IMG/VR virus record: IMGVR_UViG_3300028676_000003
Location: 124,001 to 188,000 of that record
DNA length: 64,000 nt
Reading direction: 5' to 3' (one strand)
In this document: piece by piece, positions 3,050 to 51,835 of the stretch
Numbering within the stretch: position 1 is the stretch's first letter
Layout: the number at the start of each line of letters is the position of its first letter
The notes under the pieces: generated by a model
What the model was told of the DNA's origin: nothing
The model's database searches: none
Seen by the model: the letters and a program-made list of their open reading frames with translations, nothing else
Translations under genes and position numbers: made by a program

Positions 3050-3097
3050 AATATTTACTATTAGATATTTATTAGTAAAATACATAAAAACAAACAT

Positions 3098-5239
3098 ATG
3101 AGTTACATAATTAAAAGTACAAGTCCATTTGTTAGCATTAAGTTAACACAAAAGGGTAGAGAGTCATTAGCACAAGGGAAATTAAATTTCTCATTTTGGG
3201 CTATTGGTGATTCTGAAATAAACTACGGAAGAGAATCTATCGTCGATGCTAATCCTACTGATGTTACATTATCAGCGACTAGTATGGTTTTAAGACCGTT
3301 TGACCAACAACCAAATATAAAAACATTTATTACTCCAAGTAATAATACTGACCCATTCCAAGTAGTTAATAGTTCAGTTATAAACGTTGTAAAAGCAATT
3401 GTAAATAACCAAGCAACTGACAGAGGTTTCTTTAGTCAAAGCGGAAGTACATTTACAACACAAAGTGGTTCAACATATACTCCATATAACACAACAATAG
3501 CAAATACAGTTCTTAACGGTACTAATGTACTTGCTATGACAACAACAAATGTTGCGGTTGGTGACCTTATTATGATTAAGGTTTCAAATACAACTCTTGG
3601 TAACGTAGTTCCTTTTGAAAATGGTAGAGCAATGCCGAATCTTTGGTTCAAGGCCCAAGCAGTTAGTGTTGGTTCAGTAACTCTTGATAGAAACCTACCA
3701 AATTATTCAGCACAATCAACTCTTTCTCAAGTATTTGTTTACAGAGGTGGTGAAGTTTATAATTCAATTGCAACTGGTAGTACAGTAGCTTATTGGGATT
3801 CAGGAACTCTTGCTTTTGATTCAAACAACAGCATTACTTGTGATGATGTTCCAGTTTGGAATATGAACAATGTTTGGTGTGAAAACTTAGCTGGTATTAC
3901 TGGTCTTACTACAACAAATCTTTATGAAGACTACACCAAGTTTGGTTCATTCCCTTATTTAGGAACAAAGTACCCTTATTTGGAGTATGCGTGTGACGGA
4001 ACTGGAATAACTCAATCAACAACATTTGATTGTAACAACGCTGGTGATAGTTATTCTGATGATGTAAGCAAATCTATTAGTATTTTACACTACACAAACA
4101 ATACAATATCAAGTCTTTATGGTGAATTTTTCTATACCGATGTTGATAATGGAAAATATGTTAGAATTTCGTTACCTGACCTTATGTATCATAGAAAATC
4201 AGGTACTACTGCTAGTGGAACTAGTATGGGTATGGATTTTGTTGCTACAGGTACTACAAAATTAATTCAAAATACAGATATTCAATATTTAGATTTATAT
4301 GAGGATTCAGCTTTATTATCAAGCGGTTCAACAGCTCAAGTAGTTGGTAGGGTTTTCCCACAATTAAAAACAGTTGTTATCCATGATGATGAAATCGTGG
4401 CGGCTTCTTCTTACAAATCAAACCGTAATTGGACACTACCTGCATTGACTGCTTCATTACAGTCACCAAGTGGTGGTACTTCTACAGGTATGTTGGATGT
4501 TAACAAAACAATGTATATCACTTATAGCTTACAAAATACGCTTGCAACTGGTTTAAAATCAAGTCTTCCTTGTCAAAAATACACAAAGATTACCAACAAC
4601 ACATCATCTGCTAAGGATATTGCATTTAAAATGAGTGATACTGATTTACTTTCATTCATGCGTAAGATTGAATCAGGTTATGATGGTTATGGTTTCTATG
4701 CTGACAAATTTAAGTTGCTTTACCAAATCGTTGATGATTCTAATGATAGACCTGATGCTGGAGCTTGGAAAGAATATGATTTCACAAGTACTGCTATTAC
4801 TGGTGGAGCTGGGCAAACAATAAACCCTAAATTACTTGAAAATCAATCACCATCAACTCTTGGATTTATCCTTGATTCATTAAAGAATACAGGTGCTACA
4901 ACGTTCGATTTGATTAGCTTGTTAAACTTGCCGACTAATCTTCAACCAACAAATTTACAGTTTGGTGATGAGAGATTCTTCTATGGTAACTTATCAACTT
5001 ACATTGGTGCAACAATTTACAAAACAATCTTTGATATTAGAATAAACGCTAGTCAATTTAACTCGACTACAAACCCTTCTAGAAGCAAAGATATTACAAC
5101 AAGTCTTCCAAATATTAAGGTTAGTGAGATTGGAATTTACGATACAGATAAAAATCTTGTTTGTATTGGAAAATTATCAAATCCAGTAGCTCTTACAAAC
5201 GGAAATACAATCATGATTGAGTTAAGTTTAGATTTCTAA
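3098..5239 (+). CDS. Putative virion structural protein with tail-collar-fibre-like C-terminal domain
   Basis: N-terminal KLTQKGRESLAQG...AIGDSEINY and C-terminal SEIGIYDTDKNLVCIGKLSNPV, both paralogous to the next ORF. TATTTATT motif upstream. Confidence 0.6.
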   Translation: MSYIIKSTSPFVSIKLTQKGRESLAQGKLNFSFWAIGDSEINYGRESIVDANPTDVTLSATSMVLRPFDQQPNIKTFITPSNNTDPFQVVNSSVINVVKAIVNNQATDRGFFSQSGSTFTTQSGSTYTPYNTTIANTVLNGTNVLAMTTTNVAVGDLIMIKVSNTTLGNVVPFENGRAMPNLWFKAQAVSVGSVTLDRNLPNYSAQSTLSQVFVYRGGEVYNSIATGSTVAYWDSGTLAFDSNNSITCDDVPVWNMNNVWCENLAGITGLTTTNLYEDYTKFGSFPYLGTKYPYLEYACDGTGITQSTTFDCNNAGDSYSDDVSKSISILHYTNNTISSLYGEFFYTDVDNGKYVRISLPDLMYHRKSGTTASGTSMGMDFVATGTTKLIQNTDIQYLDLYEDSALLSSGSTAQVVGRVFPQLKTVVIHDDEIVAASSYKSNRNWTLPALTASLQSPSGGTSTGMLDVNKTMYITYSLQNTLATGLKSSLPCQKYTKITNNTSSAKDIAFKMSDTDLLSFMRKIESGYDGYGFYADKFKLLYQIVDDSNDRPDAGAWKEYDFTSTAITGGAGQTINPKLLENQSPSTLGFILDSLKNTGATTFDLISLLNLPTNLQPTNLQFGDERFFYGNLSTYIGATIYKTIFDIRINASQFNSTTNPSRSKDITTSLPNIKVSEIGIYDTDKNLVCIGKLSNPVALTNGNTIMIELSLDF

Positions 5240-5242
5240 GAA

Positions 5243-6436
5243 ATGGGATATATTAATACAGCAACAACACTTACGTTAACTGCAAAGTTAACACCACTTG
5301 GTAGACAAAAACTTGTTTCTACTAATAACGCACTTATAAAAACGTTTAGCTTAGGTGATTCTGACGCTAACTACTACGCAACCAAGACACTACCTACTGG
5401 TCAAGTGCCTAGTCTTGCTGGTAATGTTGGCCCATATGTTAGTACTAGCAATAGTACAACACAATCTATTGGTCTTAAAAGCGTTCTTATGGTTAATACT
5501 TCAGGTTCTCTATACAAGCCTGTTGCATCACAATCATATACGATTCTTTCTGAGATAAAACCTAATGGTGTAAACGTAGTTACTGGTGCCAGTATTACTC
5601 AAAATGTCGTAGATAGAAATAATTTCGCTACTGATGCTCTTGTTAATTTATTTTATTCGTTCGGATTATCGTTGAATAGTGTTGGTGACTCATTATTTAC
5701 AGCAACAACTTATACAAATGGTGGTTTTTCTAATACTGCTTTTAGTGGTCTTGCTCAATCTAAGATTCTTGTTATCGCTATCGATGGTTCACAATATGGT
5801 GAATGTATTGATGGTAAAACAATTAAACTTGAATTACCTACTTCTGCTGGAACATATACTATTTATAGTACTTATCAAGGTGGAGTTTCAAATACTTCAC
5901 AATTAGATGCTTTAAATTCAGATTCTGCTAGTGTTCTTAGTAGATTTGGAAATAATGTTAGCGCATTGGTTTCTGATGATATTATGACACCTAACGGTGG
6001 TGACCCTGCATTGAGTTGGGCAACTGGTTACGGAACTGCAAAGCCATTCTCATTGAATCAGAAACAACCTTATAATTTCCAAACAAACGCAAATCTAGGT
6101 GTAACAGCTGATACTCTTGTGGGTATGGCTTACTTAGATAAAGGTTTCTTGGTTATTACGGACCCTACAATTGTAGGTAATTTTAGTAATATGGCTCCTA
6201 CTATTACTCTTGATAGTGTTTCAACTGATGTTTACCAAAGTATCACTTGTATTGCTGACAGAGGTGAGTTCGGTTCTACAACAAATCCTACATTTAATGT
6301 TGGTGATGTTCCTAGAATTACTGAAATTGGTTTATATGATGACGCAAGCAATCTTATTGCTGTAGCGAAAACTGATAAGCAAATTACCAAAAATGTGAAT
6401 GAATTCCTTGCTTTAGGAATAATTATTAGTCTTTAA
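5243..6436 (+). CDS. Putative virion structural protein, paralog of 3098-5239
   Basis: N-terminal KLTPLGRQKLVS...SLGDSDANY and C-terminal TEIGLYDDASNLIAVAK. Confidence 0.6.
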   Translation: MGYINTATTLTLTAKLTPLGRQKLVSTNNALIKTFSLGDSDANYYATKTLPTGQVPSLAGNVGPYVSTSNSTTQSIGLKSVLMVNTSGSLYKPVASQSYTILSEIKPNGVNVVTGASITQNVVDRNNFATDALVNLFYSFGLSLNSVGDSLFTATTYTNGGFSNTAFSGLAQSKILVIAIDGSQYGECIDGKTIKLELPTSAGTYTIYSTYQGGVSNTSQLDALNSDSASVLSRFGNNVSALVSDDIMTPNGGDPALSWATGYGTAKPFSLNQKQPYNFQTNANLGVTADTLVGMAYLDKGFLVITDPTIVGNFSNMAPTITLDSVSTDVYQSITCIADRGEFGSTTNPTFNVGDVPRITEIGLYDDASNLIAVAKTDKQITKNVNEFLALGIIISL

Positions 6437-6485
6437 CCTTTATTTTATTTTTATCTTGATTAGATTAGGATAAAAAGATTAAAAA

Positions 6486-7143: not shown

Positions 7144-7175
7144 TTTGTGTGAATAAATCTTTTTTCGTACCTTTG
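7144..7175 (+). promoter_or_regulatory. Bacteroidota-type sigma-A promoter for the primase
   Basis: TTTG(7144-47)-N20-TACCTTTG(7168-75) matches the TTTG-N19-21-TAnnTTTG consensus. ATG is 5 nt downstream. Confidence 0.8.
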
Positions 7176-7180
7176 TCCCT

Positions 7181-8155
7181 ATGGCAATGTTATTAGTTAA
7201 TATATTAGAGAGTTTTCTAGGGGATGTTAGAAAGCATAACGAAGATACGGGACAAATCACTTTTGATTGTCCTGCGTGTTCCGCTGAGCAAAACATGCCT
7301 GATGGAGATGGTAAAGGAAACCTAGAAGTTAACTATAATCGTAGTATTTTCAAGTGTTGGGCCTGTCAAGACACCAATAACATGCATGGAGTGATAATGA
7401 AGCTCCTTAAAAAGTATGCCACCCCTAAGAATATACGTGATTACCTACTAGTTAAACCTGATGCTGATACCATTACACCCCTAGAGAAGAAGGAAGTTGT
7501 AGTTACTCTACCTGAAGGCTATAAAAAACTATCAGAATGTACTACCAAGGATTTTAAATACGGTCAAGCAATGAAATATTTGCGTGAACGTGGTATTACT
7601 GATGAAATAATCAGGTATTTTGAAATAGGATATACATACAAGGGTGATTTTTTCAATAGAATTATCATTCCATCGTATGATTCTGAAGGAAAATTGAATT
7701 ATTTCATTGCAAGATGGTTTGGAAATGAGTATACGAAGTTAAAATACATCAATCCAACTGCCGAAAAACAAGAAATAATATTCAACGAAGGTAAAATTAA
7801 CTTTGATGCAACGATTTATCTTGTTGAAGGGGTTACCGACCATATTGTTGTTCCAAATTCTATACCTCTATTAGGAAAATACATCTCAGATAAGCTTATG
7901 GACCTGTTACATGACAATGCTAATGGTAATATAGTAATTGTTCTAGATGATGATGCCTATGAGGATGCTAAGATTCTATACCACCAACTTAATTTTGGTA
8001 ACCTTAGAGATAGAATACGTATAGTAAAGATACAGAATATTGAGGGTCATGACCCGTTGGACCCGTCTAAGATATTTGAAAAGTGGGGTCCTAAAGCTAT
8101 TGTTAGTTTATTAAGAAGTGCTTTTAAACTGCCTGAGACGGATTATTACGTATAA
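7181..8155 (+). CDS. DNA primase (Zn finger + TOPRIM)
   Basis: CPAC...CWAC zinc finger, YLRERGI, RIIIPSY, VEGVTD and LDDDA TOPRIM motifs. Confidence 0.88.
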   Translation: MAMLLVNILESFLGDVRKHNEDTGQITFDCPACSAEQNMPDGDGKGNLEVNYNRSIFKCWACQDTNNMHGVIMKLLKKYATPKNIRDYLLVKPDADTITPLEKKEVVVTLPEGYKKLSECTTKDFKYGQAMKYLRERGITDEIIRYFEIGYTYKGDFFNRIIIPSYDSEGKLNYFIARWFGNEYTKLKYINPTAEKQEIIFNEGKINFDATIYLVEGVTDHIVVPNSIPLLGKYISDKLMDLLHDNANGNIVIVLDDDAYEDAKILYHQLNFGNLRDRIRIVKIQNIEGHDPLDPSKIFEKWGPKAIVSLLRSAFKLPETDYYV

Positions 8156-8648: not shown

Positions 8649-8693
8649 AACTTTTAATTATAAATATTTGGAACCTACAAGAAAAAATAGTGT

Positions 8694-9389
8694 TTAATAT
8701 TTTTTTCTATTTAAATTACCTTCATAAATAATACCATTAATTTCTCTCGTTGTTGACCATAAAGGTCTTAAGTTTTCTAATGAATTTACAATTATTATTG
8801 GTGTATCTTTATTATAAGTAACAATTGGTTTGATATGGTCAATATGCCACTCACCATAATTTTCCCAAGTCATACCATCTGTGAACAACGATTCAAGATG
8901 TGATTTAAGTTCTAATGCTGAATAACCTAATAAATTAATCGTTTTATTTTCCTTTTTTTGACCTAACCGTTTTAATGAATTATTTAATACATTTCTCCAA
9001 GCTATTATATGTTTTATTTTATCACGATATTCTTTTGTTTTACCACTTTCTTTATAAAATTGTTGTCTTTCTTTTATTTTAGATTTATTATCGTCTGAAT
9101 ATTTTTTAACTGAAGCTTTTATTTCATCTTTATTATCAATGTAGTGTTTTGCTCTTCTATCTTTATTTTTATCACTTTTAGAATATTTATTATTTTTTTG
9201 TTTCACCTTATCTGGATTATTATTAACCCAAATCTTATATTTTTCTTTATTTTTTTCGCTATAATTTTTGTTTAAAGTACTTTGACATGATTTACAAATA
9301 TATTTCAAATTATCTTTAGGGTCATTACCTTTATTGTATTCTGTTAATGATTTATCTTCTAAACATTTTCTACAGTTTTTAGTTTCCAT
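8694..9389 (-). CDS. Free-standing HNH endonuclease (probable homing endonuclease) with N-terminal Zn ribbon
   Basis: CRKC...CKSC, Lys-rich helical middle, TWENYGEWHIDHIKP...NLRPLW...GN. Start moved to METKN (9389) because TATTTATA lies 12 nt upstream of it. Confidence 0.8.
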   Translation of the reverse strand: METKNCRKCLEDKSLTEYNKGNDPKDNLKYICKSCQSTLNKNYSEKNKEKYKIWVNNNPDKVKQKNNKYSKSDKNKDRRAKHYIDNKDEIKASVKKYSDDNKSKIKERQQFYKESGKTKEYRDKIKHIIAWRNVLNNSLKRLGQKKENKTINLLGYSALELKSHLESLFTDGMTWENYGEWHIDHIKPIVTYNKDTPIIIVNSLENLRPLWSTTREINGIIYEGNLNRKKY

Positions 9390-9474: not shown

Positions 9475-9506
9475 CTTGCATTTACCTTAATTTGGTCGTA
9501 CCTTTG
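9475..9506 (+). promoter_or_regulatory. Bacteroidota-type promoter (proximal) upstream of the DNA polymerase
   Basis: CTTG-N20-TACCTTTG. Confidence 0.7.
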
Positions 9507-9520
9507 TATAAATATTTATA
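9507..9520. promoter_or_regulatory. Palindromic back-to-back TATTTATA motif between the divergent HNH and polymerase genes
   Basis: TATAAATATTTATA is a perfect 14-bp palindrome. An identical copy is at 16704-16717. Confidence 0.55.
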
Positions 9521-9527: not shown

Positions 9528-12500
9528 ATGAGTCAAACAAAAACGAAAGTCGATAACTTGGTTATCGAAAAATTTCTTGAAGGAACTGACCCGCAAAAGT
9601 ATATAGTTGGTGTTGAAGCTGTTTATGATAAACCAATTGTAACGTTGGTAATCAATGATAGAGATACAGACACCAAGTATTTAGAAGAGCACAGGTATAA
9701 ACCATTCCTTTGGTTTAAAGAAGACATTACCACAGTCATTTACGGTGGTAGTAAAACAAAGATACGAGAAGCGGCCGCTAGGCACGGTATCAAAATGGTT
9801 AAGCTTAGAACTGCTAATGATGATGGGTTTACACCTGTACGTCTACAAAATGGTTATAAGTTCTTAGCAACATGTACTAAATCATACAATGAATTAATCA
9901 ATTTCTTTAAATTCGGTGGTGTAGACCCATTTAGTAAAGAATACCAAAAGAACTTCGTTATGTTTAGTCCTACTGAACAATTCCTTATCCAAACAGGTAA
10001 GCGTTTGTTCAAAGGTATCGACGATTATAACGATGTTCACAGGTTCCAATATGACTTGGAGACCGAGGGTTTATTTGCTGACAGTCATGCAATATTCCAA
10101 ATCGGTGTACGAGACAATAGAGGATTCGAAGGTGTTCTAGAAACTGTCGGTGCGAGAACACAAGCACTTATCGAACAAGAGCGTGAAGCTAAGGATGAAA
10201 TAACGAAACTAGCCATTAGAGCTGAGTTAGAATTAATCAAAGATACACCTCAAGAATTACGTGAGGCAGAACGTCAAAATATCAAGAAATTCTTTGAAAT
10301 TATTGACGCTGTTAAACCTGATATTATCACTGGATATAACTCAGAGGACTTTGACTGGCCTTTCTTATTTAAAAGAGCTGAGAGACTTGGTATTTCAATT
10401 ACTGAATTAGCAATTACTCTTAATCGTGCATCTAAGATTAAACGTAAAGAAGCTTCTTTGAAATTGGGTGGTGAGACCCAAAAGTATCAACAAACTCACA
10501 TGTATGGATATAGTATTATCGATATCTCACATGCTGTTCGTAGAGCCATGGCGATTAACTCGGAAATCAAAGGATGGGGATTGAAATATATCACTCAATA
10601 CTCTGAGATTGCGAAGCCAAATAGGGTTTATGTGCCTGGGGATAAGATTAATACAACTTGGAGAGATAAGAAAAACGAGTACGCTTTCAACAATGAAAAT
10701 GGTGATTGGTACAAGATTACAGCAAAGGCTCCATTAAAAGAAAAATATTCAAAAGTTAAAGGTGCTTATATAGTACAACGTTACTTATGTGATGACTTGT
10801 GGGAAACTGAACAAATTGATACTATTTTCAACCAAGCCAGTTTCCTTATTTCGAAGATTCTTCCAACATCATTCCAACGTAGTTCTACAATGGGTACAGC
10901 TGGACAATGGAAGCTTATTATGTCTGCATGGTCTTATGAGAACGGTCTTGCTATTCCTGAGTTACAACAAAAACGTGAATTTACTGGTGGTCTTTCTAGA
11001 CTTCTTGAAGTAGGTTTCGCTAAAAATGTATACAAGTTAGATTATGCCGCTTTATATCCTAAAACACAGTTAACTCACTTTATTTTCCCTGACTTAGATA
11101 TTTCAGGTGTAATGGAAGGAATGCTTACTTATGTTGTTGATAGCCGTGATAAATTTAAGTTCTTGACTGGTGTTGAAAAGAAAACATATAAAGCATTAGA
11201 AGGTAAATTGAAAGCTGAGAAAGCTAATATGACTGACGCTGAAATCGAGGAATTAACTGAGAGAATTGCGAAGCATAAAGCACTATCAAATCTTTACGAT
11301 AAAAAACAATTACCACTTAAGATTCTTGCTAACTCATGGTTCGGTTCATATGGTGCGCCATATATCTTTAATTGGGGTGATTCGGATTCTGCTGAGGAAA
11401 CAACTTGTCGTGGTCGTCAATATTTACGTCTTATGGTTAAACACTTCTATGAGAAATATAAGTTTAGACCTCTTGTAGGTGATACCGATGGTTTCAACTT
11501 TGCGGCACCTGATAACTTGGAAGAAATTACTTATCTTGCTAAAGGTACGCATTGGAAAACTGAAGATGATGCAAACAAGTTACTTGTTGGTATCGATGCT
11601 GTTCTTGCAGAGTTTAACGAAACTTATATGGAAGGTCGTATGGGTCTAGATTTAGATGATGTATGTTCTTCAACAATCAACTTTGCTAGAAAGAACTACG
11701 CCAATGATATTGGTGGTAAGATTAAGCTTGTTGGTAACTCGGTTAAATCTAAGAAAATGTCGGTTTATATAGAAGAATTCTTAGGAAAAGGTATTCGTAT
11801 GCTTTTAGATGGTGATGGTCATTCATTCATAAATTATTACTATGAGTATGTAGATAAAATCTATAATTACCAAATTCCATTGGTTAAGATTGCATCTAAA
11901 GCTAGAGTTAAAACAACAGCTACTGAATACGCTAAGAAAGCAACTCAGAAAAATAAAGCTGGGAATCCAATGCCAAAGCAAGCTCACATGGAGTTAGCAT
12001 TAAAAGATGGACTTGGAATTAACTTAGGTGATACACTTTATTATGTGAATACTGGTCTTATGAAGTCTCACGGAGATTTAAAAACAGAAACAAACAAGGC
12101 TACTGGTTTAAAAACAGTAACTCTTAACTGTAAATTAATCAACCCTGATACTGTAGAAAAAGATTTTGAGCTTATAAAAGAATTGGAGATTCTTAAAAAA
12201 GGTTTACTTGTACTTGAAGAAGCTGAGTCCGAAGCTAAAAAAGATATTGAAGATAGAATTCAAGAAATTGAAAACTCTCTTGTAACTGATGAGTATAATG
12301 TTGCTCGTTACTTGGATAATTTCAACAAAAAGGTTAAACCTCTTTTGGTTTGTTTCAACGAAGAAGTTCGTGGTAAGGTTTTATTAGATATCGTTAAGGT
12401 TAAAAATAAAGAAACCAAAAAAACAACTGACACACTAAAACAAAGAGTTATTTTTTCTCCTTATGAGTGTGAACTAATTTCAGGTATTCCTTTTAAAGAA

Positions 12501-13307
12501 GGTGACCAAGATTCATATGAAGACCTTATGCGTATGGAAGATAAAGAAATTAAGTTTTGGGATAAGGTTGATAAGGTTCCAAATAACATGGAAGAACACG
12601 TTTGGGCCGAGCTTAGAATTGATTATCATGAAAGAATGGTAATTGCTAAGATTGAAGGTGTTGAACGAGAAAAAGAAGTTATGGATGATATCATCAAACA
12701 CTTAGAAGTTAGTGACTTAGAAGGTGCAATGAGAGGTGAATTACCACTAGATGTATTTGTCATGGCTGATATGGCTGACGATGATTCAGGTGCGATTGTT
12801 TCTAGAAAATTTGGAGAAGTACTATGTTATTTCGATGAATTATTTAAATACGAATCTGATGCTATTAGACGTAATGAATTTTACCATCTTAATGGAAATC
12901 TAAATGATGCTATCGACAGATACGAACAATGGTTAGATTACAACGCAGAAAACATTGTAATGACTGGTTCAACAGTTGAAACAAGCGGACAAATGGAATT
13001 ATTCTCAGATTCTGATATTGATTCCGTAATCAAGAGAGTTAAGGTAAAAAGCAAGACAGCTACTAAGAAATCAATAGCTATGCTTAATGCTGAGAAAGCT
13101 GAACCTAAAAAGAAAGCTAGTGAAGATGAAGATGATGAAGAAGTTGTTTTTATTCTTGACGCTAACGGACAATTGGTTAGAAAAGATGAAATATTACAAT
13201 TGGATGACGAATTCGATGATACCTTTGGAGATATGCCTGAAGGATATGTTGTTTATGAAGCACCAATTACTCCAAAAGAACCTGAAAAGGACGAGTGGGG
13301 ATTTTAA
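9528..13307 (+). CDS. Family B DNA polymerase with 3'-5' exonuclease
   Basis: Exo motifs YDLETEG, GYNSEDFDWP, YLCDD. Polymerase motifs LDYAALYP (A), KILANSWFGSYG (B), VGDTDG (C). Confidence 0.95.
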   Translation: MSQTKTKVDNLVIEKFLEGTDPQKYIVGVEAVYDKPIVTLVINDRDTDTKYLEEHRYKPFLWFKEDITTVIYGGSKTKIREAAARHGIKMVKLRTANDDGFTPVRLQNGYKFLATCTKSYNELINFFKFGGVDPFSKEYQKNFVMFSPTEQFLIQTGKRLFKGIDDYNDVHRFQYDLETEGLFADSHAIFQIGVRDNRGFEGVLETVGARTQALIEQEREAKDEITKLAIRAELELIKDTPQELREAERQNIKKFFEIIDAVKPDIITGYNSEDFDWPFLFKRAERLGISITELAITLNRASKIKRKEASLKLGGETQKYQQTHMYGYSIIDISHAVRRAMAINSEIKGWGLKYITQYSEIAKPNRVYVPGDKINTTWRDKKNEYAFNNENGDWYKITAKAPLKEKYSKVKGAYIVQRYLCDDLWETEQIDTIFNQASFLISKILPTSFQRSSTMGTAGQWKLIMSAWSYENGLAIPELQQKREFTGGLSRLLEVGFAKNVYKLDYAALYPKTQLTHFIFPDLDISGVMEGMLTYVVDSRDKFKFLTGVEKKTYKALEGKLKAEKANMTDAEIEELTERIAKHKALSNLYDKKQLPLKILANSWFGSYGAPYIFNWGDSDSAEETTCRGRQYLRLMVKHFYEKYKFRPLVGDTDGFNFAAPDNLEEITYLAKGTHWKTEDDANKLLVGIDAVLAEFNETYMEGRMGLDLDDVCSSTINFARKNYANDIGGKIKLVGNSVKSKKMSVYIEEFLGKGIRMLLDGDGHSFINYYYEYVDKIYNYQIPLVKIASKARVKTTATEYAKKATQKNKAGNPMPKQAHMELALKDGLGINLGDTLYYVNTGLMKSHGDLKTETNKATGLKTVTLNCKLINPDTVEKDFELIKELEILKKGLLVLEEAESEAKKDIEDRIQEIENSLVTDEYNVARYLDNFNKKVKPLLVCFNEEVRGKVLLDIVKVKNKETKKTTDTLKQRVIFSPYECELISGIPFKEGDQDSYEDLMRMEDKEIKFWDKVDKVPNNMEEHVWAELRIDYHERMVIAKIEGVEREKEVMDDIIKHLEVSDLEGAMRGELPLDVFVMADMADDDSGAIVSRKFGEVLCYFDELFKYESDAIRRNEFYHLNGNLNDAIDRYEQWLDYNAENIVMTGSTVETSGQMELFSDSDIDSVIKRVKVKSKTATKKSIAMLNAEKAEPKKKASEDEDDEEVVFILDANGQLVRKDEILQLDDEFDDTFGDMPEGYVVYEAPITPKEPEKDEWGF

Positions 13308-13340: not shown

Positions 13341-14486
13341 TTAGTATACATAGAACCCTAGAGGTCTAAATTGTAATTGTCTGTTTAAGAATTCTGCTTC
13401 TTGTGCTCCACGCTCCAATTGAGCTGTACTTGAAAGCCTAAGAAGTCTTGCATCAAGTCTTTCTAAAACTGCTCTTCTTTCATCGTTTCCTTCTGAAATA
13501 AGTGTTTCATAATCCATGATTCTTTCAGCTTCAGGCGGTCCAACAACACCACCAAACTTTCCACGAGTTCTACCAAGTGCTCTCTTAGCTTCAGCAATAA
13601 ATAATTGTCTGATAAGAGTCTTTGTAGGTGGGTTAAATGATGAGAAATCTAATTCTGATAAAGGAACTTGATTTGGTAATTGGATAATATCAGGATTATC
13701 TTTCTTACACTTGTCAGCATCTTCATCTGTTAATTTTGAAGTATCGTAATAGTGATACCAAACTTGACACCCAGTCATATTGATTGAGTTAGGTACTCCA
13801 CCTAATCCAGTACCAAACGATAACTTAGACCCAGGAACACTCAATAAATGAAGTAATTTCGTTCCATTAGGACCTGCTGTAATCTTGTGAACAAGCTCAC
13901 TTCTAACCATTCTATTCTTAAGGTTCATATCTGCCGCAGTAAGAAGTACATCGAACGCTGGTGTAATGTAGTAACCAGCATTTTGACCACCACCTTGAGC
14001 AACACCTTGTCCAGTTTGGGCAAATCCACCACCGAAACCACCATCAAGTCCACCGTAGCTACCAAATAAGGCTGGCGTAATTGTTGGAGGTGTAATCCAA
14101 AGAACTTCGTTAATTTCACGTCCTGCTGGGATTGTGTAGACTTGTCTACCTGCTTCGATTTCAACGAAGTCTTTCTTTAATTCATAAGGACCATTAGCTT
14201 GTAGACCAACTCCTTTAGAATAAGCATAAGTATATTGTGTAATGAAGTCAAAGCCTCTTACACTTAATGCAAATGCCATATCGGTTGTGTCAATACTTGA
14301 ACCTAACAATGATTGCCATTGGTGTTCAACAAGCCATTCTTGAACGTATTGAGCATAGTCTTCAATAGCTATTTCTAATAGCGTACAAAGTTGCTCATCT
14401 TCCAATTCAATCTGACGGATTGGTGCTCCGACAGAGTGTCTAAATTGACGAAATATTTTATCTCTTTCTGTTGTGCTTACTGCCAT
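13341..14486 (-). CDS. Neck / head-tail adaptor protein (T4 gp13-like)
   Basis: N-terminal SVGAPIRQIELEDEQLCTLLEIAIEDY resembles the gp13 LGAPVINVE-type motif. C-terminal LGRTRGKFGGV. TATTTATA 14 nt upstream. Confidence 0.7.
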   Translation of the reverse strand: MAVSTTERDKIFRQFRHSVGAPIRQIELEDEQLCTLLEIAIEDYAQYVQEWLVEHQWQSLLGSSIDTTDMAFALSVRGFDFITQYTYAYSKGVGLQANGPYELKKDFVEIEAGRQVYTIPAGREINEVLWITPPTITPALFGSYGGLDGGFGGGFAQTGQGVAQGGGQNAGYYITPAFDVLLTAADMNLKNRMVRSELVHKITAGPNGTKLLHLLSVPGSKLSFGTGLGGVPNSINMTGCQVWYHYYDTSKLTDEDADKCKKDNPDIIQLPNQVPLSELDFSSFNPPTKTLIRQLFIAEAKRALGRTRGKFGGVVGPPEAERIMDYETLISEGNDERRAVLERLDARLLRLSSTAQLERGAQEAEFLNRQLQFRPLGFYVY

Positions 14487-14523
14487 GTTTGTTGTTTTAT
14501 TATAAATATAATAAAACTTGTAA

Positions 14524-16703: not shown

Positions 16704-16717
16704 TATAAATATTTATA
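16704..16717. promoter_or_regulatory. Palindromic back-to-back TATTTATA motif between the divergent SNF2 and neck genes
   Basis: TATAAATATTTATA, 13 nt upstream of ATG 16731. Confidence 0.6.
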
Positions 16718-23549: not shown

Positions 23550-23579
23550 GTTTTATCACATATTTATAATTAAAACACA

Positions 23580-23981: not shown

Positions 23982-24042
23982 AAGAAAATAAATTTTATGA
24001 TATTTATTATAAAATAAAACAATTTAAAAAATACAAACGAAC

Positions 24043-25001: not shown

Positions 25002-25068
25002 GCTATTTACAAAAAAATTTAAATTTCTATATTTATTTTTATACATAATAATTTAAACACGTTTCATA

Positions 25069-26632: not shown

Positions 26633-26665
26633 ATTTAATATGATATTTATAAACAAAGATTAATC

Positions 26666-30687: not shown

Positions 30688-30718
30688 TTGACAATGTCGA
30701 AAAAAAACCGTATATTTG
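30688..30718 (+). promoter_or_regulatory. Strong host-type promoter with no adjacent ORF
   Basis: TTGACA-N17-TATATT, which is also TTG-N20-TATATTTG. Confidence 0.75.
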
Positions 30719-35275: not shown

Positions 35276-38200
35276 CATAACAAATAAGATAGGTTGTCAA
35301 ACAAGCGGAATAAAGATTGTAGACCCTAACGATTTTGACGGTTTTAACTCATCATCAAATATGTCAGTTCTAACTGAAGATTTAAATATCTCAGTTGTCC
35401 TTAGAACAAAGAAAAAAGGTAGAACTGTTTTAACAAAAACTGGTGATAATTCTACAGGTACTAGAGAAAGTACCAGCAATATAGCAATCAACTTCATTGA
35501 AGGTAGTGATATTAGCGGTAAAAAGGTTTTAACTACAAAATACACTGATTTAACAACAATCTTTGATAAGGATATAATTAATAACGAAACACTTGGAATT
35601 ACAGGTATCGATATTGATTTTAATTCGTCTATGGCTCCAATGATTAACATTAATTTTGTTGATGTTAGAGGTTCTAGTATTTTCCAAAACGAAGAAAATA
35701 TTTCAGGGAATAATTCAGCAAATAAATATTCAACATTCTTCCAACTTCCATATCCAATCTTCGAATTGGAAATTAAGGGTTATTACGGGAAACCAGTAAC
35801 CTATTGTCTTCACATGCTTAAGTTTAGTTCTAAATTTAACTCTAAGACTGGAAACTTTGAGATTCAATGTCAATTCATCGGATATACTTATGCGATGCTT
35901 TCTGACATGCTTATTGGTTTCCTTAAAGCTATTCCATTTACAACAATTGGTGCTTCAAAATTTAAGGACTACAAAGCAAATAGTGCAAACCCTGATAATA
36001 TCATAACACTTGTTGATTTGATGCGTAACATTTCTAGAATAAATGATGGTGTTAAAAAACTATCATCAACATCTCCAAATGCGGTAGCTGATAACTCAAT
36101 AAAGGTTGGTATTGAAAAATTGGGTGCTATTACTAGCATCATTAATTTTTTGGGTTCTGAATTACAATACGGTCATAGTACTGATAAGGCTTCAAACCCT
36201 GATACTTATGAATTTATTGTTAAATCATCAACTGTATTAACACAAGCTGAAATAGATTCAATTAAATTATACCAAGATAATGTAAAGACAGCAATTGATA
36301 ACTTTAATGGGTTGAGTCTTGGTGTAACACTTAATGTTGCAGATTTTCAATCAATAACACTTGTTGGTTCAGGTACTGGTTTCTATCATGATATCACAAA
36401 AGCTCAATTATCACCTACAAGTGGAGATATTGCTGGTGATGCTAACTTAGGTGCTAGTATTGGTTCAAATGCTGATTTGGTTACACTTAAAAGAAACTTA
36501 TTAGCTTATTTAGAGAAAAATTACTCAGGTATAAGGGATGATTATAAATTAGATGTTTATGATATGAATTCTCTATTAGCTAAATTAACTACAGCTACTG
36601 AAACACTTACAAAAAGTGCAAAAACAGTTCGTGAAAATCTAGCTCTTGAATTAAAATCAACAGTTCGTGAACAGTTAGGTTTTGAACCAACTGTTAGAAA
36701 TATCATTGAAATATTTACTGCGGCAATCGAAACTTTTATGGAAACAATCTATGAAGTGTCTAGACGTGCTGAAGCAACAACTAACAATGTTAGAACTGCT
36801 CAATTGGAAAACAAATTCAAAGATGACCTTGTTAAGGTAGACTCAAAAAAAGAATACATAGATGCTAAGAAATTCTTTGCTTGGCCTGATTATAGAGAAA
36901 AAGATGAAAAAACAAAAACCTTTGTTGAAAAATACTTAGGTTCAAGTGGTGTATTAGATAACCCAAAACAAGTTGATGAAATTGATTTTATCGATGACCT
37001 TCTTAAGGCGTTTTTAATTGCGGCTGAGAAGAGTGCAGATGTTGTAAATCAAATGCAAAGTGAAGCAACTACTTGGTTTCCAATAAACCCAATGGATAGT
37101 CAAATATTTGTTGATGGTGAACCTTATCAAAGAACTCAATTAAGTAGCAATGAAGATATAACAAGACTTATGGTTATCAGAGGTATGACTTATTTAGGGT
37201 ATACAAACGATGAAACTATTCTAACTGAAGATGAAATCAAAGCAATGGCTGAAATTGAAGCTGAAGCTATTCTTAGAGGTGTTAAAAACCCTACACTTAA
37301 AACTTCACTTACGTTTGTAAATTTAGATTATGTAAAAAACATTAAAGGTGTTATTAATAATATCTCTGAAAATGTTGTTGTACCTAAAGACGATAGATTT
37401 GTTTATAATTATATCTATGGTAAACAACCTGAAGGGCCTAATAGTGTTGTTATTCCAATTAGTGATACATTTACTGGTAATTGGCCTACAAAGACTTCTG
37501 ATTTAAAAATAAAAGCAGATGATGGTTCTACTTTCTTAACAAACTATAGTTCAGATAACTATTTGGTTGGTAAAAAGGTATTGGATGGTGGTCAGTATGT
37601 TAAAATAATTCCAAAAAATAAATTAAATGGTAATGCGCTTATCTCGACAACAGCAAAGGTAAAACCTGAAAGTATTTTTAGTCTTGATAAAATGAAATCT
37701 GATAGTGTTGATGCAACAGCTGGATTCAACTCTTTCGGTGGTAGTATGGGTACTCAAGAATATGTGAATATGGACTTCGGTGGCCTTGATGGGTTACCGC
37801 TTATGTATGTATTTTACAAGAATTCTGATAATGGTATGTCTATGAACAGAACCAATACTGGAATAGAACAGAAAGTACCTAAGAATGCACCAACTAGTTC
37901 AGTTTATGATATAAAATCTAGTGGTTTCATACCAGCAATACTTGGTAGAGATAAAGAAGAAGGTTATGAGGGTAAAAATGGTAGACATATTGTTAGTAAT
38001 CTTGGAAAAAATAGAGAATTATTCCATGGATTTATTAAAAATAGTGATACTAGCCTAACATATCCATATGTTGAGCAAAGATATCGTGATGAAGATAGAG
38101 ATGCGTATGATGAAAACTCATTTAGTCTTTTTGGTAGTCAATGGTATTATAATCAAGATAAAGCTAGGTGTATTCTTTCTGATAACACACAATATAATTG

Positions 38201-40934: not shown

Positions 40935-40966
40935 TTTGGTAGATTTAAAAAGTTTTAGTACCTTTG
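40935..40966 (+). promoter_or_regulatory. Bacteroidota-type promoter (probably leaderless)
   Basis: TTTG-N20-TACCTTTG, with ATG 4 nt downstream. Confidence 0.8.
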
Positions 40967-40970: not shown

Positions 40971-41600
40971 ATGAAGATAGCAAATATTGTTACAACGCAA
41001 AGCACAAATGTTTCAGAAGACTTTAATGTAGTGGGGTCTATGGATGAGATAATCCATGGACTTCCTACGTTGATAGTTGGTTTTGATTATGTTAACAAAC
41101 ACTATCCTGATTTCGATATTATGGAACGTGAAGTGGAGCCTAACTTATATTGGATTTTCAAGAAGACAGAAAAAAGAGATGATTTCGAAACTGGTATGTA
41201 TTGGTTCACAAAAAAAGTCTACTCTGACTTAACCCAAGAAATATCTTACATTTATGTTGACTTTATCCAATACTCACAAAAAACTCTATTTAAAATAGTA
41301 AGAAAAATTTTAAATATTGAAAATAAAATTTCTTTTATTTTTGGCGATATGGTTTACATTTATGGCGAAAACATTATCTTTGGAGTCGATTTGAAATTAT
41401 TGAAATATATGGAGTTTGATGTTGATAAGTTAAAATTGAGAATTCAGGCCAAAAGTTCAGTCTTTTTGGGACTTAGCGATATACTTATAGAAGATAAAAA
41501 CACAGTTGAAGAACTTGGAATACAAGTTAGATACATTCCTTATTTATACTCTATACGAAATGAACAAAACGATACTACTAGCAGCATTTATATTCCCTGA
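40971..41600 (+). CDS. Hypothetical protein (209 aa)
   Basis: Full ORF directly behind a consensus promoter. Confidence 0.7.
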   Translation: MKIANIVTTQSTNVSEDFNVVGSMDEIIHGLPTLIVGFDYVNKHYPDFDIMEREVEPNLYWIFKKTEKRDDFETGMYWFTKKVYSDLTQEISYIYVDFIQYSQKTLFKIVRKILNIENKISFIFGDMVYIYGENIIFGVDLKLLKYMEFDVDKLKLRIQAKSSVFLGLSDILIEDKNTVEELGIQVRYIPYLYSIRNEQNDTTSSIYIP

Positions 41601-41961: not shown

Positions 41962-42013
41962 TGATTTTATGATATTTATATATAAATAAAAATATATAAA
42001 AACAATAATAATC

Positions 42014-42214
42014 ATGGAAAATCCAAAAAATAATACAGATTCAAAAAAAGTTGATAACTTAAACAAAGCTATCGATGGTTATTTAAATAACGAAAGTCAA
42101 GACCCTAACTTAGATTGTAGTTCAGGTGTTTGTGTAATTAAAGGTGATAAAAGCCTAGTTGAAAGAATCAACAAAAAAATAATTACTGAAGACGGTAGAC
42201 AATTATTGTACTAA
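42014..42214 (+). CDS. Small hypothetical protein (66 aa, CxxGxC motif)
   Basis: DCSSGVC. Late motif upstream, coupled to the next ORF. Confidence 0.6.
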   Translation: MENPKNNTDSKKVDNLNKAIDGYLNNESQDPNLDCSSGVCVIKGDKSLVERINKKIITEDGRQLLY

Positions 42215-43064: not shown

Positions 43065-43096
43065 GTTGCATTCTCTGCGATAAAGTAGTATATTTG
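43065..43096 (+). promoter_or_regulatory. Host-type promoter 1 of the replication module
   Basis: GTTG-N20-TATATTTG. Confidence 0.7.
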
Positions 43097-43148: not shown

Positions 43149-43178
43149 TTGACTTTTTTTTGATATGTAGTATATTTG
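43149..43178 (+). promoter_or_regulatory. Host-type promoter 2 of the replication module
   Basis: TTG(ACT)-N19-TATATTTG. Confidence 0.7.
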
Positions 43179-46997: not shown

Positions 46998-48419
46998 ATG
47001 GCAAAAATTGATAAGAATAGTTTGGGTTACTTAGGTTATGAATACCAAGTACGATTATTAGCACAAATTCTAACAGATAGAAAATTCGCTAATTCCATTC
47101 TAGATATCGTTGACCCTAATTATTTCGAAGACCAGTACTTAAGAGTTATTGCCGCAACTATCAAAGATGCGAAACGTGTAGACGATATTGTACCTGATGT
47201 AGGTAGTTTAGAATTTAGATTATTAAAAGATGTGAAAGATGACATACAAAGAAAGTATGTCATCTCACAACTTCGTAAAGTCCAAGAAGCCAATCTAAAC
47301 GACACATTAGAGGTTCAAGATATCGCTATGAAGTTCTGTAAACAACAAGAGTTGAAGAAATCAATAGCTGAAATTACCAAAATCATCAACAAAGGTGATA
47401 TCGAAAATTATGACCAATGTGAAGCAATCCTTAGAAAGGCGTTGGAACACGGTGATAACAAAGATGATGGTATGGACGTATTGGATAACATCGCTGATGT
47501 TTTGGTGGAAGATTTTAGAAAACCAATCCGTACTGGAATTGAAGGATTAGATGAAATTATGGACGGTGGATTGTCCAAAGGTGAATTAGCTGTTATCCTA
47601 GCACCATTCGGTGTTGGTAAAACAACAATGATTACCAAATTCGCAAACACGGCCATGTTAGATGGTCACAACGTTTTACAAATATTCTTTGAAGATAATC
47701 CAAAGGTTATCCAAAGAAAACACTTATCATGTTGGTCAGGTTATGATTTAAATAGTCTTTCGCTTCACAGTGAAGAAATTTTGGCTATGGTCGAAGGAAT
47801 GGCTAATGATGGTAAAAAAGGTAAGTTAAGGCTTAAAAAGTTTTCAAGTGATGGAACAACGATTCCAGTTATTAGACAATACATTAGAAAATTAATCGCA
47901 AGTGGATTTAGACCTGATTTAATTTTATTGGATTACATTGATTGTGTTGAACCGTCAAGAAAATTCGATGATGTTAACGCAGGAGAAGGAAGTGTTATGC
48001 GTCAATTCGAAGCAATGCTTGCGGAATTGGACATGGCAGGGTGGACAGCTATTCAAGGTAATAGAAGTTCGATTAAAGCAGAGGTAGTTGAGGCTGACCA
48101 AATGGGTGGTTCTATTAAGAAAGCACAAATTGCTCACTTCGTATTATCTATTGCAAAAACACTTGAACAAAAAGAGGATGATACCGCTACAATGGCGATT
48201 CTTAAGTCTCGTTTTGGTAAATCAGGTGAGGTATTCGAAAACATTCGATTTGATAACGCAAGAATTCAAATTGATATGGGTCAAAGCAATGGTGCTAGAA
48301 CTCGTACAGAATACAAGCAAGATAAAGAGGTTACAGACCAAGTTAAGATAAATGCAGTATTGGCGGCCGCTGAGAATCGCAAAAAATTACTTAACGGAGT
48401 TACTGTAGTGCCTCAATAA
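46998..48419 (+). CDS. Replicative helicase (DnaB / T4 gp41-like)
   Basis: [49 protein letters not shown]. Confidence 0.92.
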
Positions 48420-48439
48420 AAGAAATATTAACAATTAAA

Positions 48440-49393: not shown

Positions 49394-49419
49394 TAAAGAG
49401 TACAAGAACTAAAACACTA

Positions 49420-51732: not shown

Positions 51733-51748
51733 CAACATTAAACTAAAC

Positions 51749-51777
51749 AAAAGGACTCCAATCGGGGTCCTTTTTTT
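51749..51777 (+). terminator. Intrinsic terminator after nrdA
   Basis: AAAAGGACTCC-AATC-GGGGTCCTTTT followed by T run. Nearly identical to 43009. Confidence 0.85.
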
Positions 51778-51835
51778 ATTTGCCATATTTACTTCTAAAA
51801 AATAATTAGTATATATTTATCTAATAAACAATAAC

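What the first reader, a model, noticed from the sequence alone, without database searches (positions are those of the whole stretch)
3066..51821. TATTTATA late-promoter-like motif, the exact reverse complement of the T4 late promoter
Seen on the coding strand 7-50 nt upstream of starts. Plus strand: 3066 (TATTTATT), 9513, 16710, 20621, 23561, 24001 (TATTTATT), 25030 (TATTTATT), 26644, 30892, 41541, 41973, 46957, 51814 (TATTTATC). Minus strand: 8660, 9402, 14501. It follows gene direction on both strands and marks mostly virion genes, and it predicts internal starts (9389, 41560). No shared -35 element is evident. Known: T4 gp55 recognises TATAAATA with no -35. Inference: a phage-encoded sigma factor (outside this window) has a different specificity.
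Basis: partly seen in the sequence, partly recalled or inferred. Interest (0 to 1): 0.6.

Follow-up and report, generated by a model that had tools for sequence, protein, structure and literature searches.

The report
Conserved late-type promoter of a jumbo phage
The short AT-rich word (T)ATATTTAT(A) is a real, strand-specific, conserved promoter-like signal in front of tail, baseplate, head and some replication genes of a 368-kb phage that probably infects Bacteroidota. It is most likely read by a phage-made sigma factor, which is the ordinary phage strategy with a new consensus sequence.

Summary
All 16 listed sites exist; one is off by one base.

**Enrichment**
- Window intergenic DNA (2.6 kb) holds 13 sense and 2 antisense TATTTATA. 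An AT-matched null gives 1.8±1.3.
- Whole-genome intergenic DNA holds 67 sense and 5 antisense ATATTTAT (null 10-13). The 309 kb of coding DNA holds 14 and 13.

**The motif**
- The unbiased consensus is tATATTTATa-N3-AAA.
- There is no -33/-35 box, only a weak T tract.
- About a quarter of the sites directly follow a terminator hairpin.

**Two promoter classes**
- The genome also carries about 119 canonical Bacteroidota promoters (TTG-N20-TAnnTTTG), densest in the genome arms.
- The new motif (about 54 genes) is confined mostly to the central 60-250 kb.
- It precedes sheath, tube, hub, wedge, protease and fibre genes, and also DNA polymerase, DnaB and endonuclease VII.

**Conservation**
- In relatives with about 75% protein identity the core is kept in 54/55, 48/48, 47/49, 28/29 and 13/13 upstream regions.
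- It is also enriched in the distant cultured phages Flavobacterium immuto and Microcystis Mel-JY01.

**Candidate reader**
- There is no phage RNA polymerase. Three sigma genes lie outside the window.
- The only one shared with immuto and Mel-JY01 is a divergent 242-aa sigma with weak gp55 similarity.

No transcript data exist, so promoter function and the sigma assignment are inferences.

The parts
3066..3073 (+). L-type promoter core (TATTTATT variant), 24 nt before the ATG of the 713-aa gene 3098-5239
   Evidence: 14.0 bits on the matrix; sequence
8659..8666 (-).
   Evidence: 12.1 bits
9402..9409 (-). Weaker L-type core (C at -1), 12 nt before ATG 9389 of the endonuclease VII-like gene 8694-9389. 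It supports ATG 9389 rather than TTG 9416 as the start.
   Evidence: 6.8 bits; phrog_1035 endonuclease VII
9499..9506 (+). Host-type -7 box TACCTTTG, with TTG 20 nt upstream, directly before the L core of the DNA polymerase gene. This makes a dual promoter.
9513..9520 (+). L-type core 7 nt before the ATG of DNA polymerase gene 9528-13307. It is part of the palindrome TATAAATATTTATA at 9507-9520.
   Evidence: 9.9 bits; phrog_262 DNA polymerase
14501..14508 (-). L-type core before the 381-aa gene 13341-14486
   Evidence: 15.0 bits, the best in the window; conserved in 6 of 6 relatives
16710..16717 (+). L-type core before the 176-aa gene 16731-17261. It is part of the palindrome at 16704-16717 in a divergent intergenic region.
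   Evidence: 12.7 bits
20621..20628 (+). L-type core 49 nt before the tail sheath gene 20678-23512
   Evidence: 10.2 bits; phrog_23 tail sheath; core kept in every distinct upstream region of the relatives (55 of 55, 54 of 55)
23561..23568 (+). L-type core just after a terminator hairpin, before the 133-aa gene 23580-23981
   Evidence: 13.7 bits; 47 of 49 relatives, hairpin also conserved
24001..24008 (+). L-type core (TATTTATT) before the tail tube gene 24043-24531
   Evidence: 14.6 bits; phrog_4542 tail tube; 48 of 48 relatives
25030..25037 (+). L-type core (TATTTATT) before the baseplate hub-like gene 25069-26334
   Evidence: 11.0 bits; tblastn match to the 'baseplate hub subunit' of phage immuto; 28 of 29 relatives
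26644..26651 (+). L-type core after a terminator hairpin, before the 492-aa gene 26666-28144. The tape-measure-like gene 28144-30633 follows it.
   Evidence: 14.2 bits
30892..30899 (+). L-type core with G at -1, before the 1341-aa gene 30915-34940
   Evidence: Only 4.9 bits, but tagTATTTATatataaa is kept in 13 of 13 relatives
41541..41548 (+). Doubtful site inside ORF 40971-41600, 11 nt before ATG 41560
   Evidence: 3.9 bits, T at -1, no downstream AAA. Conservation could not be checked.
41973..41980 (+). L-type core before the 66-aa gene 42014-42214
   Evidence: 13.4 bits
46957..46964 (+). L-type core before the DnaB-like helicase gene 46998-48419
   Evidence: 12.2 bits; phrog_19
51814..51821 (+). 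Variant core TATTTATC before the gp25-like baseplate wedge gene 51836-52222
   Evidence: 6.9 bits; phrog_261/43 baseplate wedge
40959..40966 (+). Host-type promoter (TTTGGTAG-N-TACCTTTG) before gene 40971-41600, given for contrast with the L class
7168..7175 (+). Host-type -7 box TACCTTTG before gene 7181-8155

Best explanation
**Proposed mechanism**
- (t)ATATTTAT(a)-N3-AAA is the -10-region element of a second, probably middle or late, promoter class of a 368.5-kb jumbo myovirus whose host is most likely a member of the Bacteroidota.
- Early genes use canonical host sigma-A promoters: TTG, a 20-nt spacer, then TAnnTTTG. The two RpoD-like phage sigma genes are among these early genes.
- The new class has no -33 box. 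It differs from the host -7 box by a fixed TA at the 'nn' positions and a fixed A where the host box has G.
- I propose that host core RNA polymerase carrying a phage-encoded sigma reads it. The best candidate is the divergent 242-aa sigma at genome 101308-102036 (minus strand).
- Transcription would start at the conserved A's 5-7 nt downstream of the core, giving very short leaders that suit a host without Shine-Dalgarno sequences.

**Shown**
- The motif's enrichment, strandedness, position, conservation and genomic partition.
- The presence of the sigma genes and the lack of any detected phage RNA polymerase (one Pfam domain each of beta and beta').

**Inferred**
- That it is a promoter at all.
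- The start site and the timing.
- Which sigma reads it.
For: **Enrichment**
- Sense against antisense is 67 to 5 in intergenic DNA, against a null of 10-13. The density is about 25 times that of coding DNA.
- It is the top 8-mer in upstream regions, alongside the host-type box.

**Anatomy**
- The unbiased EM consensus is tATATTTATa-N3-Aaa, with about 50 sites.
- It sits in the same register as the host box, including the downstream A-rich patch.
- 14 of 53 sites have a terminator-like hairpin within 60 nt upstream, against 2.7% of random positions.

**Partition along the genome**
- There are no L sites in 0-60 kb. They are concentrated in 60-250 kb, where the virion genes lie.
- The 119 host-type boxes are densest in the arms.

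**Downstream genes**
- Sheath, tube, wedge, hub, head protease and tail fibre. Also DNA polymerase (which has both promoter types), DnaB and endonuclease VII.

**Conservation**
- The core is invariant upstream of orthologues in relatives with about 75% protein identity, while the flanks drift. The A is never exchanged for the host-type G.
- ATATTTAT is again among the most enriched sense-strand upstream 8-mers in Flavobacterium phage immuto (21 sense, 1 antisense, 2.2 expected). There it lies before the tube, hub and sheath genes.
- In Microcystis phage Mel-JY01 it is 24 sense, 3 antisense, 5.1 expected. There the distance to the ATG is 30-50 nt, which argues against a translational role.

**Transcription machinery**
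- Three sigma genes and no beta or beta' domains.
- Sigma-1 and sigma-2 sit behind host-type promoters.
- Immuto and Mel-JY01 have a homologue only of the third sigma.
- That protein gives a confident two-domain model (pLDDT 91). The model matches sigma factors over its full length and T4 gp55 over its N-terminal domain (Z 10.9).
- A profile comparison with gp55 gives E = 1e-4, collinear from residue 42.
- It is the only place in the genome hit by the gp55 family phrog_234 (E = 0.011).
- The gene is directly followed by an L site in this phage and in immuto.
Against: - There is no transcript 5'-end or time-course evidence. No RNA run holds this phage.
- The motif is one substitution from a host-type box (TATATTTG), and host-type boxes ending in A exist when a -33 box is present. 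Host sigma-A plus an activator therefore cannot be excluded.
- The 484-kb phage LR756508.1 has a member of the same sigma family (profile E = 3.5e-37). It shows no enrichment of the motif and no copy before its sheath, tube or hub genes. Family membership alone does not predict the motif.
- The similarity to gp55 is weak: probability 58%, 13.6 bits.
- No gp33 or gp45-type clamp was found.
- My gene calls are crude (84% coding).
- About half the sites lie a tight 10-20 nt before the ATG, which would also fit an mRNA-level signal.
Confidence: 0.62

Rival explanations
1. The motif is a promoter, but one of the two RpoD-like phage sigmas reads it (303 aa at 357729-358640, or 275 aa at 204519-205346) rather than the divergent third sigma.
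For: - Both have regions 1.2, 2 and 4.
- Both are made from host-type promoters, as expected for the first step of a sigma cascade.
- LR756508.1 has the third-sigma family but not the motif.
Against: - Immuto and Mel-JY01 keep the motif but have no homologue of either RpoD-like sigma.
- A full region 4 would normally go with a -35/-33 box, and none exists.
Confidence: 0.13
2. The motif is a weak, -33-less variant of the host sigma-A -7 box. It fires only when a phage activator or a modification of the polymerase is present, as with T4 middle promoters and MotA/AsiA.
For: - It is in the same register as TAnnTTTG and one base away from it.
- Host-type boxes ending in A occur when a good -33 box is present.
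Against: - The A and the TA dinucleotide are invariant in more than 190 orthologous sites in relatives and are never swapped for G.
- The same 8-mer is used by a phage recorded on a cyanobacterium, whose main sigma has a different -10 consensus by textbook knowledge.
Confidence: 0.15
3. The motif acts on the mRNA, as a translation enhancer or a processing site, rather than on DNA.
For: - There is a tight 10-20 nt spacing to the ATG in about half of the sites in this phage and in immuto.
- Bacteroidota lack Shine-Dalgarno sequences and use A/T-rich leaders (PMC6847099, abstract listed).
Against: - Spacing ranges from 4 to 62 nt. It is 49, 34 and 31 nt for sheath, tube and hub (8-mer end to ATG), and stays similar for each of these genes across relatives while differing between genes.
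- In Mel-JY01 the spacing is 30-50 nt.
- The motif is absent from the short junctions inside operons.
- It often follows a terminator.
Confidence: 0.06
4. The motif is a chance product of AT-rich intergenic DNA.
For: The genome has 34% G+C, and many A/T-rich words are enriched upstream of genes.
Against: - Order-2 and order-3 Markov nulls trained on the intergenic DNA itself give 10-13 copies against 67 observed.
- The strand ratio is 13 to 1.
- The core is conserved across relatives.
Confidence: 0.01

Closest known systems
Phage T4 late promoters (TATAAATA at -10, read by gp55 with gp33 and the gp45 clamp)
   Same: - An 8-bp A/T-only element with no -35 partner.
- It lies in front of virion genes and of some replication and recombination genes.
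- A phage-encoded minimal sigma is the likely reader.
- 6 of 8 positions are identical in the same orientation.
- The candidate sigma's N-terminal domain superposes on gp55 (Z 10.9).
   Different: - The central AA is TT.
- The candidate sigma is 242 aa with a second, sigma-4-like domain, where gp55 has 185 aa.
- No gp33 (phrog_254) and no gp45 N-domain (PF02916) were found.
- Sequence similarity to gp55 is marginal.
Bacteroidota primary-sigma promoters (-33 TTTG / -7 TAnnTTTG)
   Same: - Same register: tA-TA-TTT-A-T against TA-nn-TTT-G-T.
- The same A-rich patch 6-8 nt downstream.
- The phage's own early promoters are textbook examples of this class.
   Different: - No -33 box.
- A instead of G, invariably.
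- The 'nn' positions are fixed as TA.
- The first T is only about 50% conserved.
Sigma cascades of Bacillus phage SPO1 (gp28, then gp33/34), and 'group 2' jumbo phages that carry minimal and RpoD-like sigmas but no RNA polymerase (PMC7824862)
   Same: - Several phage sigma genes, no phage polymerase, family-B-type DNA polymerase, T4-like tail genes.
- The review describes exactly this repertoire, including Bacteroidetes phages.
   Different: - The promoter consensus of such Bacteroidota and environmental phages has not been described in the literature I could search.
- Only two promoter classes were found here for three sigmas.

Membership tests
T4-type late promoter system | TATAAATA on the non-template strand at about -10 | tested here: not met
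   The consensus is tATATTTATa. Sense-strand TATAAATA is barely enriched in intergenic DNA (19 against a null of 12-13), and most copies are the antisense image of the motif.
T4-type late promoter system | No -35 element | tested here: met
   Information content upstream of the core is at most 0.45 bit per position. There is only a T tract at -18 to -15.
T4-type late promoter system | gp55-family sigma encoded by the phage | tested here: inconclusive
   - phrog_234 hits only the third sigma gene, at E = 0.011.
- hhalign gives probability 58%, E = 1e-4.
- Structural Z is 10.9 to 7d7c_F, but Z is 9-10 to many other sigma domain-2 structures.
T4-type late promoter system | gp33 co-activator and gp45 sliding clamp | tested here: not met
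   There is no phrog_254 match at E <= 10 and no PF02916 match at E <= 1. Very divergent versions cannot be excluded.
Bacteroidota sigma-A promoter | -7 box TAnnTTTG | tested here: not met
   A replaces G in 90% of EM sites and in nearly all orthologous sites.
Bacteroidota sigma-A promoter | -33 TTG with a 19-20 nt spacer | tested here: not met
   13 of the 17 L cores with a TA prefix have no TTG in the expected place. The E class shows a sharp 20-nt spacer.
Sigma-70 family (for the 242-aa candidate) | Domain 2 fold and Sigma70_r2 signature | tested here: met
   - PF04542 scores 25.6 bits in the six-frame search and 23.6 bits on the protein, against a cut-off of 24.
- The family profile hits SigA at E = 0.004.
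- The model aligns to sigma domain-2 structures with rmsd 2.6-2.8 Å over 93-97 residues.
Sigma-70 family (for the 242-aa candidate) | Domain 4 (helix-turn-helix that binds the beta flap and the -35 box) | tested here: inconclusive
   Full-length alignments to sigma-E, AlgU, sigma-H and sigma-B cover residues 12-242 (Z 9-11). There is no Pfam region-4 hit, and the C-terminal domain was not searched on its own.
Functional promoter | Transcript 5' ends at a fixed distance downstream | not testable with these tools
   All 17 public runs that hold this DNA are DNA metagenomes from peat, soil and water.

The most novel reading that the evidence does not exclude
The 242-aa protein may found a large, uncharacterised family of late sigmas. 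The family has more than 1,200 clusters at 50% identity and thousands of environmental phage contigs. These sigmas would join a gp55-like domain 2 to a domain-4-like module in one chain, taking over the gp33 role. In one large branch they would read a -35-less ATATTTAT box regardless of host phylum (Bacteroidota and Cyanobacteria). That would give a portable, self-contained sigma and promoter pair, and a marker for late genes in a very abundant group of uncultured jumbo phages.
Probability: 0.35. Interest if true: 0.6.

Novelty: new variant of a known kind. Interest (0 to 1): 0.45.

Why it matters
- It gives a concrete, testable regulatory map (early host-type against late phage-type promoters) for a very abundant, entirely uncultured clade of jumbo phages from peat, soil and water.
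- It points to a conserved hypothetical protein as their late sigma.
- It identifies a cultured relative, Flavobacterium phage immuto, in which the prediction can be tested at the bench.
- It adds a second promoter specificity for Bacteroidota, where few promoters other than the TAnnTTTG type are known. This could be useful for gene-expression tools.
- The strategy itself, a phage sigma redirecting the host polymerase to an A/T-rich -10 box without a -35, is well known from T4 and SPO1.

Tried and rejected
- **Phage multisubunit RNA polymerase.** No Rpb2_6 or Rpb1_2 domain was found. Very divergent phiKZ-type enzymes might escape Pfam, but the three sigma genes argue for use of the host core enzyme.
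- **A third promoter class to match three sigmas.** K-mer analysis of the 112 upstream regions lacking both motifs gave only A-rich leader words and a TAnCTTTAC variant of the host box that comes with a -33 box. The two -33 flavours, TTTGGTAG and CTTGC, share the same 20-nt spacer and the same genomic distribution.
- **EM seeded with the motif on all upstream regions.** It drifted to the stronger host-type box. It worked only after regions containing TAnnTTTG were removed.
- **My first dinucleotide-shuffle null.** It timed out and was replaced by Markov nulls.
- **LR756508.1 as a further test of the sigma and motif link.** It has the sigma family but not the motif. This weakens the assignment and is reported as such.
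- **gp33 and gp45 homologues.** None were found.
- **PHROGs on the sigma-3 operon neighbours.** These were uninformative apart from PhoH and a hub-like protein.
- **Two 2,671-nt gene-poor gaps of identical length.** They are unrelated sequences.
- **Template-strand reading of TATAAATA (a true 'mirror' of T4).** I considered this, but nothing supports it and the register with the host box explains the sequence more simply.
- **No complex prediction was run.** No host polymerase sequence is known.
Full report
**What the window is**

The window is bases 124,001-188,000 of a single 368,549-bp virus record.
- The record has 33.6% G+C, and its two ends overlap by about 150 bp.
- It is rated complete and comes from IMG/VR.
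- The only public run that holds all of the 6-kb test stretch is a peat metagenome. Partial holders are peat, soil, groundwater and freshwater samples, and none is an RNA run.
- A crude codon-usage gene call gives 510 genes, 452 of them on the plus strand. Aragorn finds 62 tRNA genes.
- The window encodes tail sheath, tail tube, a hub-like protein, a gp25-like wedge protein and a tape-measure-like protein. It also encodes a family-B-type DNA polymerase, a DnaB-like helicase, an SSB-like protein and an endonuclease VII-like protein.

Yes. All the listed coordinates carry the stated words. The minus-strand site given as 8660 is 8659-8666.

The raw count of 23 against 11.5±3.3 in shuffles understates the signal, because the signal is about strand and place.
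- In the window's 2,631 nt of intergenic DNA there are 13 TATTTATA in the sense of the downstream gene and 2 antisense. An order-2 Markov model trained on that same DNA gives 1.8±1.3.
- Genome-wide, intergenic ATATTTAT is 67 sense and 5 antisense, against 9.9-13.1±3.3 under order-2 and order-3 nulls. The 309 kb of coding DNA holds 14 and 13.
- ATATTTAT is the single most over-represented 8-mer in the 120 nt upstream of genes (57 sense, 12 antisense, 7.9 expected).
- Of the 28 window genes with at least 35 nt of spacer upstream, 15 carry TATTTAT within 70 nt. The tightly packed internal genes do not.

**Anatomy**

An EM search on upstream regions that lack the host-type box gives about 50 sites with consensus tATATTTATa, three variable bases, then Aaa. 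Nothing exceeds 0.3 bit further upstream apart from a T-rich patch.
- In sites selected on the exact 7-mer, the T tract sits 15-18 nt upstream of the core.
- Part of that T tract is the U-tract of a preceding terminator. 14 of 53 sites have a hairpin plus T run within 60 nt upstream, usually ending 10-18 nt before the core. Only 2.7% of random positions do.
- The core ends 4-62 nt before the ATG, with a sharp mode at 10-20 nt.

**A second motif gives the context**

The other top word is TACCTTTG (57 sense, 8 antisense).
- Aligned, these sites read TTG (as TTTGGTAG or CTTGC), a strict 20-nt spacer, then TAnnTTTGTa.
- By established knowledge this is the -33/-7 promoter of the Bacteroidota primary sigma.
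- Start codons are not preceded by Shine-Dalgarno sequences.
- The closest cultured relative infects Flavobacterium.
- Together these point to a Bacteroidota host. That is an inference.
- TAnnTTTG lies upstream of 119 genes and is densest at 0-60 kb and 250-368 kb.
- The new motif lies upstream of 54 genes. None is in 0-60 kb, and most are in 60-250 kb, where the virion genes lie.
- Seven genes carry both, including the DNA polymerase gene in the window. There TACCTTTG (9499-9506) abuts the new core (9513-9520).

**Register with the host box**

When EM was seeded with the new motif on all regions, it slid onto the host box without any shift. tA-TA-TTT-A-T lines up with TA-nn-TTT-G-T, and both have an A-rich patch 6-8 nt after the G/A position.
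- This fixes the likely start site at the conserved A's 5-7 nt after the core.
- It also shows that 'reverse complement of T4' is not needed to explain the sequence.
- In the same orientation, TATTTATA and T4's TATAAATA already agree at 6 of 8 positions.

**Conservation**

IMG/VR holds at least 226 contigs with a sheath 70-79% identical in protein. The table counts distinct upstream regions that keep the core.

| Gene | Regions keeping the core | Calls |
|---|---|---|
| Sheath | 55 of 55 / 54 of 55 | 32 / 42 |
| 133-aa gene | 47 of 49 | 42 |
| Tube | 48 of 48 | 42 |
| Hub | 28 of 29 | 42 |
| 1341-aa gene | 13 of 13 | 42 |
| 381-aa gene | 6 of 6 | 42 |
| Internal control gene | 0 of 10 | 42 |

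- The flanks differ from gene to gene and drift between relatives, while aTATTTAT stays fixed.
- The host-type G never replaces the A. This argues for a specificity distinct from the host sigma.

Two distant cultured phages use the same word.
- In Flavobacterium phage vB_FspM_immuto (160 kb), ATATTTAT is 21 sense and 1 antisense against 2.2 expected, and TATTTATA is 25 and 8 against 2.8 expected. The motif lies 11-31 nt before the tube, hub, sheath-sized and many other genes of the structural half.
- In Microcystis phage Mel-JY01 (190 kb), ATATTTAT is the top upstream 8-mer at 24 sense and 3 antisense against 5.1 expected. There it sits 30-50 nt before the ATG, with AGGA-type ribosome sites in between.
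- A distance to the ATG that changes with the host's translation system is what a promoter predicts. It is not what a translational element predicts.

**Who reads it?**

No beta or beta' domain was found. Three sigma-70-family genes were found, all outside the window.
- Two are RpoD-like, with regions 1.2, 2 and 4 and a match to phrog_351. They are 35% identical to each other.
- Both sit behind host-type promoters.
- The third, at genome 101308-102036 on the minus strand, encodes 242 aa and reaches Sigma70_r2 only at the cut-off.
- It is highly conserved, at 76-90% identity in relatives whose sheath is 70-79% identical.
- It belongs to a large unnamed family: 7,796 hits in the word search and 1,232 clusters at 50% identity.
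- An AlphaFold model built from 66 diverse members has pLDDT 91 and shows two helical domains.
- Nearly every structural neighbour is a sigma factor. T4 gp55 matches the N-terminal domain (Z 10.9, 117 residues). ECF-type and other sigmas match over residues 12-242.
- The family profile against gp55 gives E = 1e-4, collinear from residue 42 in both proteins.
- The gp55 family phrog_234 hits this gene and nothing else in the genome, at E = 0.011.
- No gp33 or T4-type clamp was detected.
- Immuto and Mel-JY01 have a homologue of this third sigma only (tblastn 5e-17 and 6e-12). They have no Sigma70_r2 hit, immuto has no phrog_351 hit, and tblastn finds no homologue of the RpoD-like pair in either.
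- In this phage and in immuto the gene is immediately followed by an L site.
- The third sigma is therefore the best candidate. This is correlation across three lineages, not proof.

**A counter-example**

The 484-kb uncultured phage LR756508.1 is more distant (sheath 31%, tube 41%, this sigma 24% identical).
- It has a clear family member (profile E = 3.5e-37).
- It shows no enrichment of the motif and no copy before its sheath, tube or hub genes.
- Either the specificity drifted in that lineage (40% G+C), or the assignment is wrong.

**What remains open**
- The timing, meaning whether 'late' is the right word.
- The start site.
- The reader of the motif.
- The role of the T tract.
- What the two RpoD-like sigmas do.
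- The presence of the motif before DNA polymerase, DnaB and endonuclease VII suggests a middle-to-late class or overlapping control. T4 late promoters also serve some replication and recombination genes, by general knowledge of T4.

**Literature**

Full-text searches for the motif with 'phage' and 'promoter' found nothing relevant. The same holds for searches on TAnnTTTG with phage and on jumbo-phage sigma factors. A comparative review describes 'group 2' jumbo phages, Bacteroidetes phages among them, that lack a polymerase and carry minimal and RpoD-like sigmas plus gp33 (PMC7824862). The gene repertoire is therefore of a known kind. The promoter consensus, and its link to this sigma family, are new as far as I could search.

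**Verdict**

This is a real, conserved, strand-specific promoter-like element of a second promoter class. It is most probably read by a phage-encoded sigma.
- The kind of system is known. The consensus sequence and the candidate sigma family are new.
- Confidence that the motif is a functional transcription signal is about 0.85.
- Confidence in the full model, with the third sigma as reader, is about 0.5-0.6.

Noticed in passing
whole genome; in the window at 7168-7175, 9499-9506 and 40959-40966: About 119 textbook Bacteroidota promoters: TTG, an exact 20-nt spacer, then TAnnTTTGTa. They come in two -33 flavours, TTTGGTAG and CTTGC, with the same genomic distribution. Together with the absence of Shine-Dalgarno sequences this points to a Bacteroidota host.
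   Followed up: partly
genome 357729-358640 (+), 204519-205346 (+), 101308-102036 (-), all outside the window: Three phage sigma-70-family genes. Two are RpoD-like (35% identical to each other) and lie behind host-type promoters. One is a divergent two-domain sigma. Only two promoter classes were found for them.
   Followed up: partly
genome 228804-228879: Among the 62 tRNA genes, aragorn calls one with anticodon CTA, which would read the TAG stop codon. Long window ORFs are intact under the standard code, so no recoding is evident in the window. Gene-poor stretches at 14-35 kb and 278-300 kb were not examined for it.
   Followed up: no
window 9507-9520 and 16704-16717: The palindrome TATAAATATTTATA sits in two divergent intergenic regions, so the core is present on both strands. 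These may be bidirectional promoters. For the gene 14778-16277/16619 the minus-strand copy lies about 85 nt before the TTG start.
   Followed up: no
genome, e.g. upstream of genes at 5588, 330063, 54432: In several host-type promoters the -33 TTTGGTAG lies inside a G+C-rich hairpin followed by a T run, so the terminator and the next promoter overlap. The stem ends 8-13 nt before the -7 box.
   Followed up: no
window 60096-60104: TATATTTAC lies 20 nt before the ATG of gene 60123-60974, inside the end of the preceding gene.
   Followed up: no
window 43089-43096, 43171-43178, 54074-54081, 26363-26370, 30711-30718: TATATTTG boxes, which are host-type and one base away from the L core, lie before the SSB-like gene 43235 and the genes at 54111 and 26414, and in the long spacer before 30915. 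The two classes differ at these sites only by G against A and by the -33 box.
   Followed up: no
window 30915-34940, 35265-40931, 54466-58326: Very large ORFs (1341, 1888 and 1286 aa). The first two have no PHROG match; the 1286-aa ORF was not scanned. They lie within the tail and baseplate region.
   Followed up: no
IMG/VR and protein collections: The clade is very abundant. At least 226 viral contigs carry a close sheath homologue. There are 7,796 database hits for the small sigma, on contigs up to 362 kb, almost all annotated as hypothetical.
   Followed up: partly
genome ends, 1-150 and 368400-368549: The two ends repeat about 150 bp with a few mismatches. This is consistent with a circularly assembled or terminally redundant genome, although IMG/VR classes the record as linear.
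   Followed up: no
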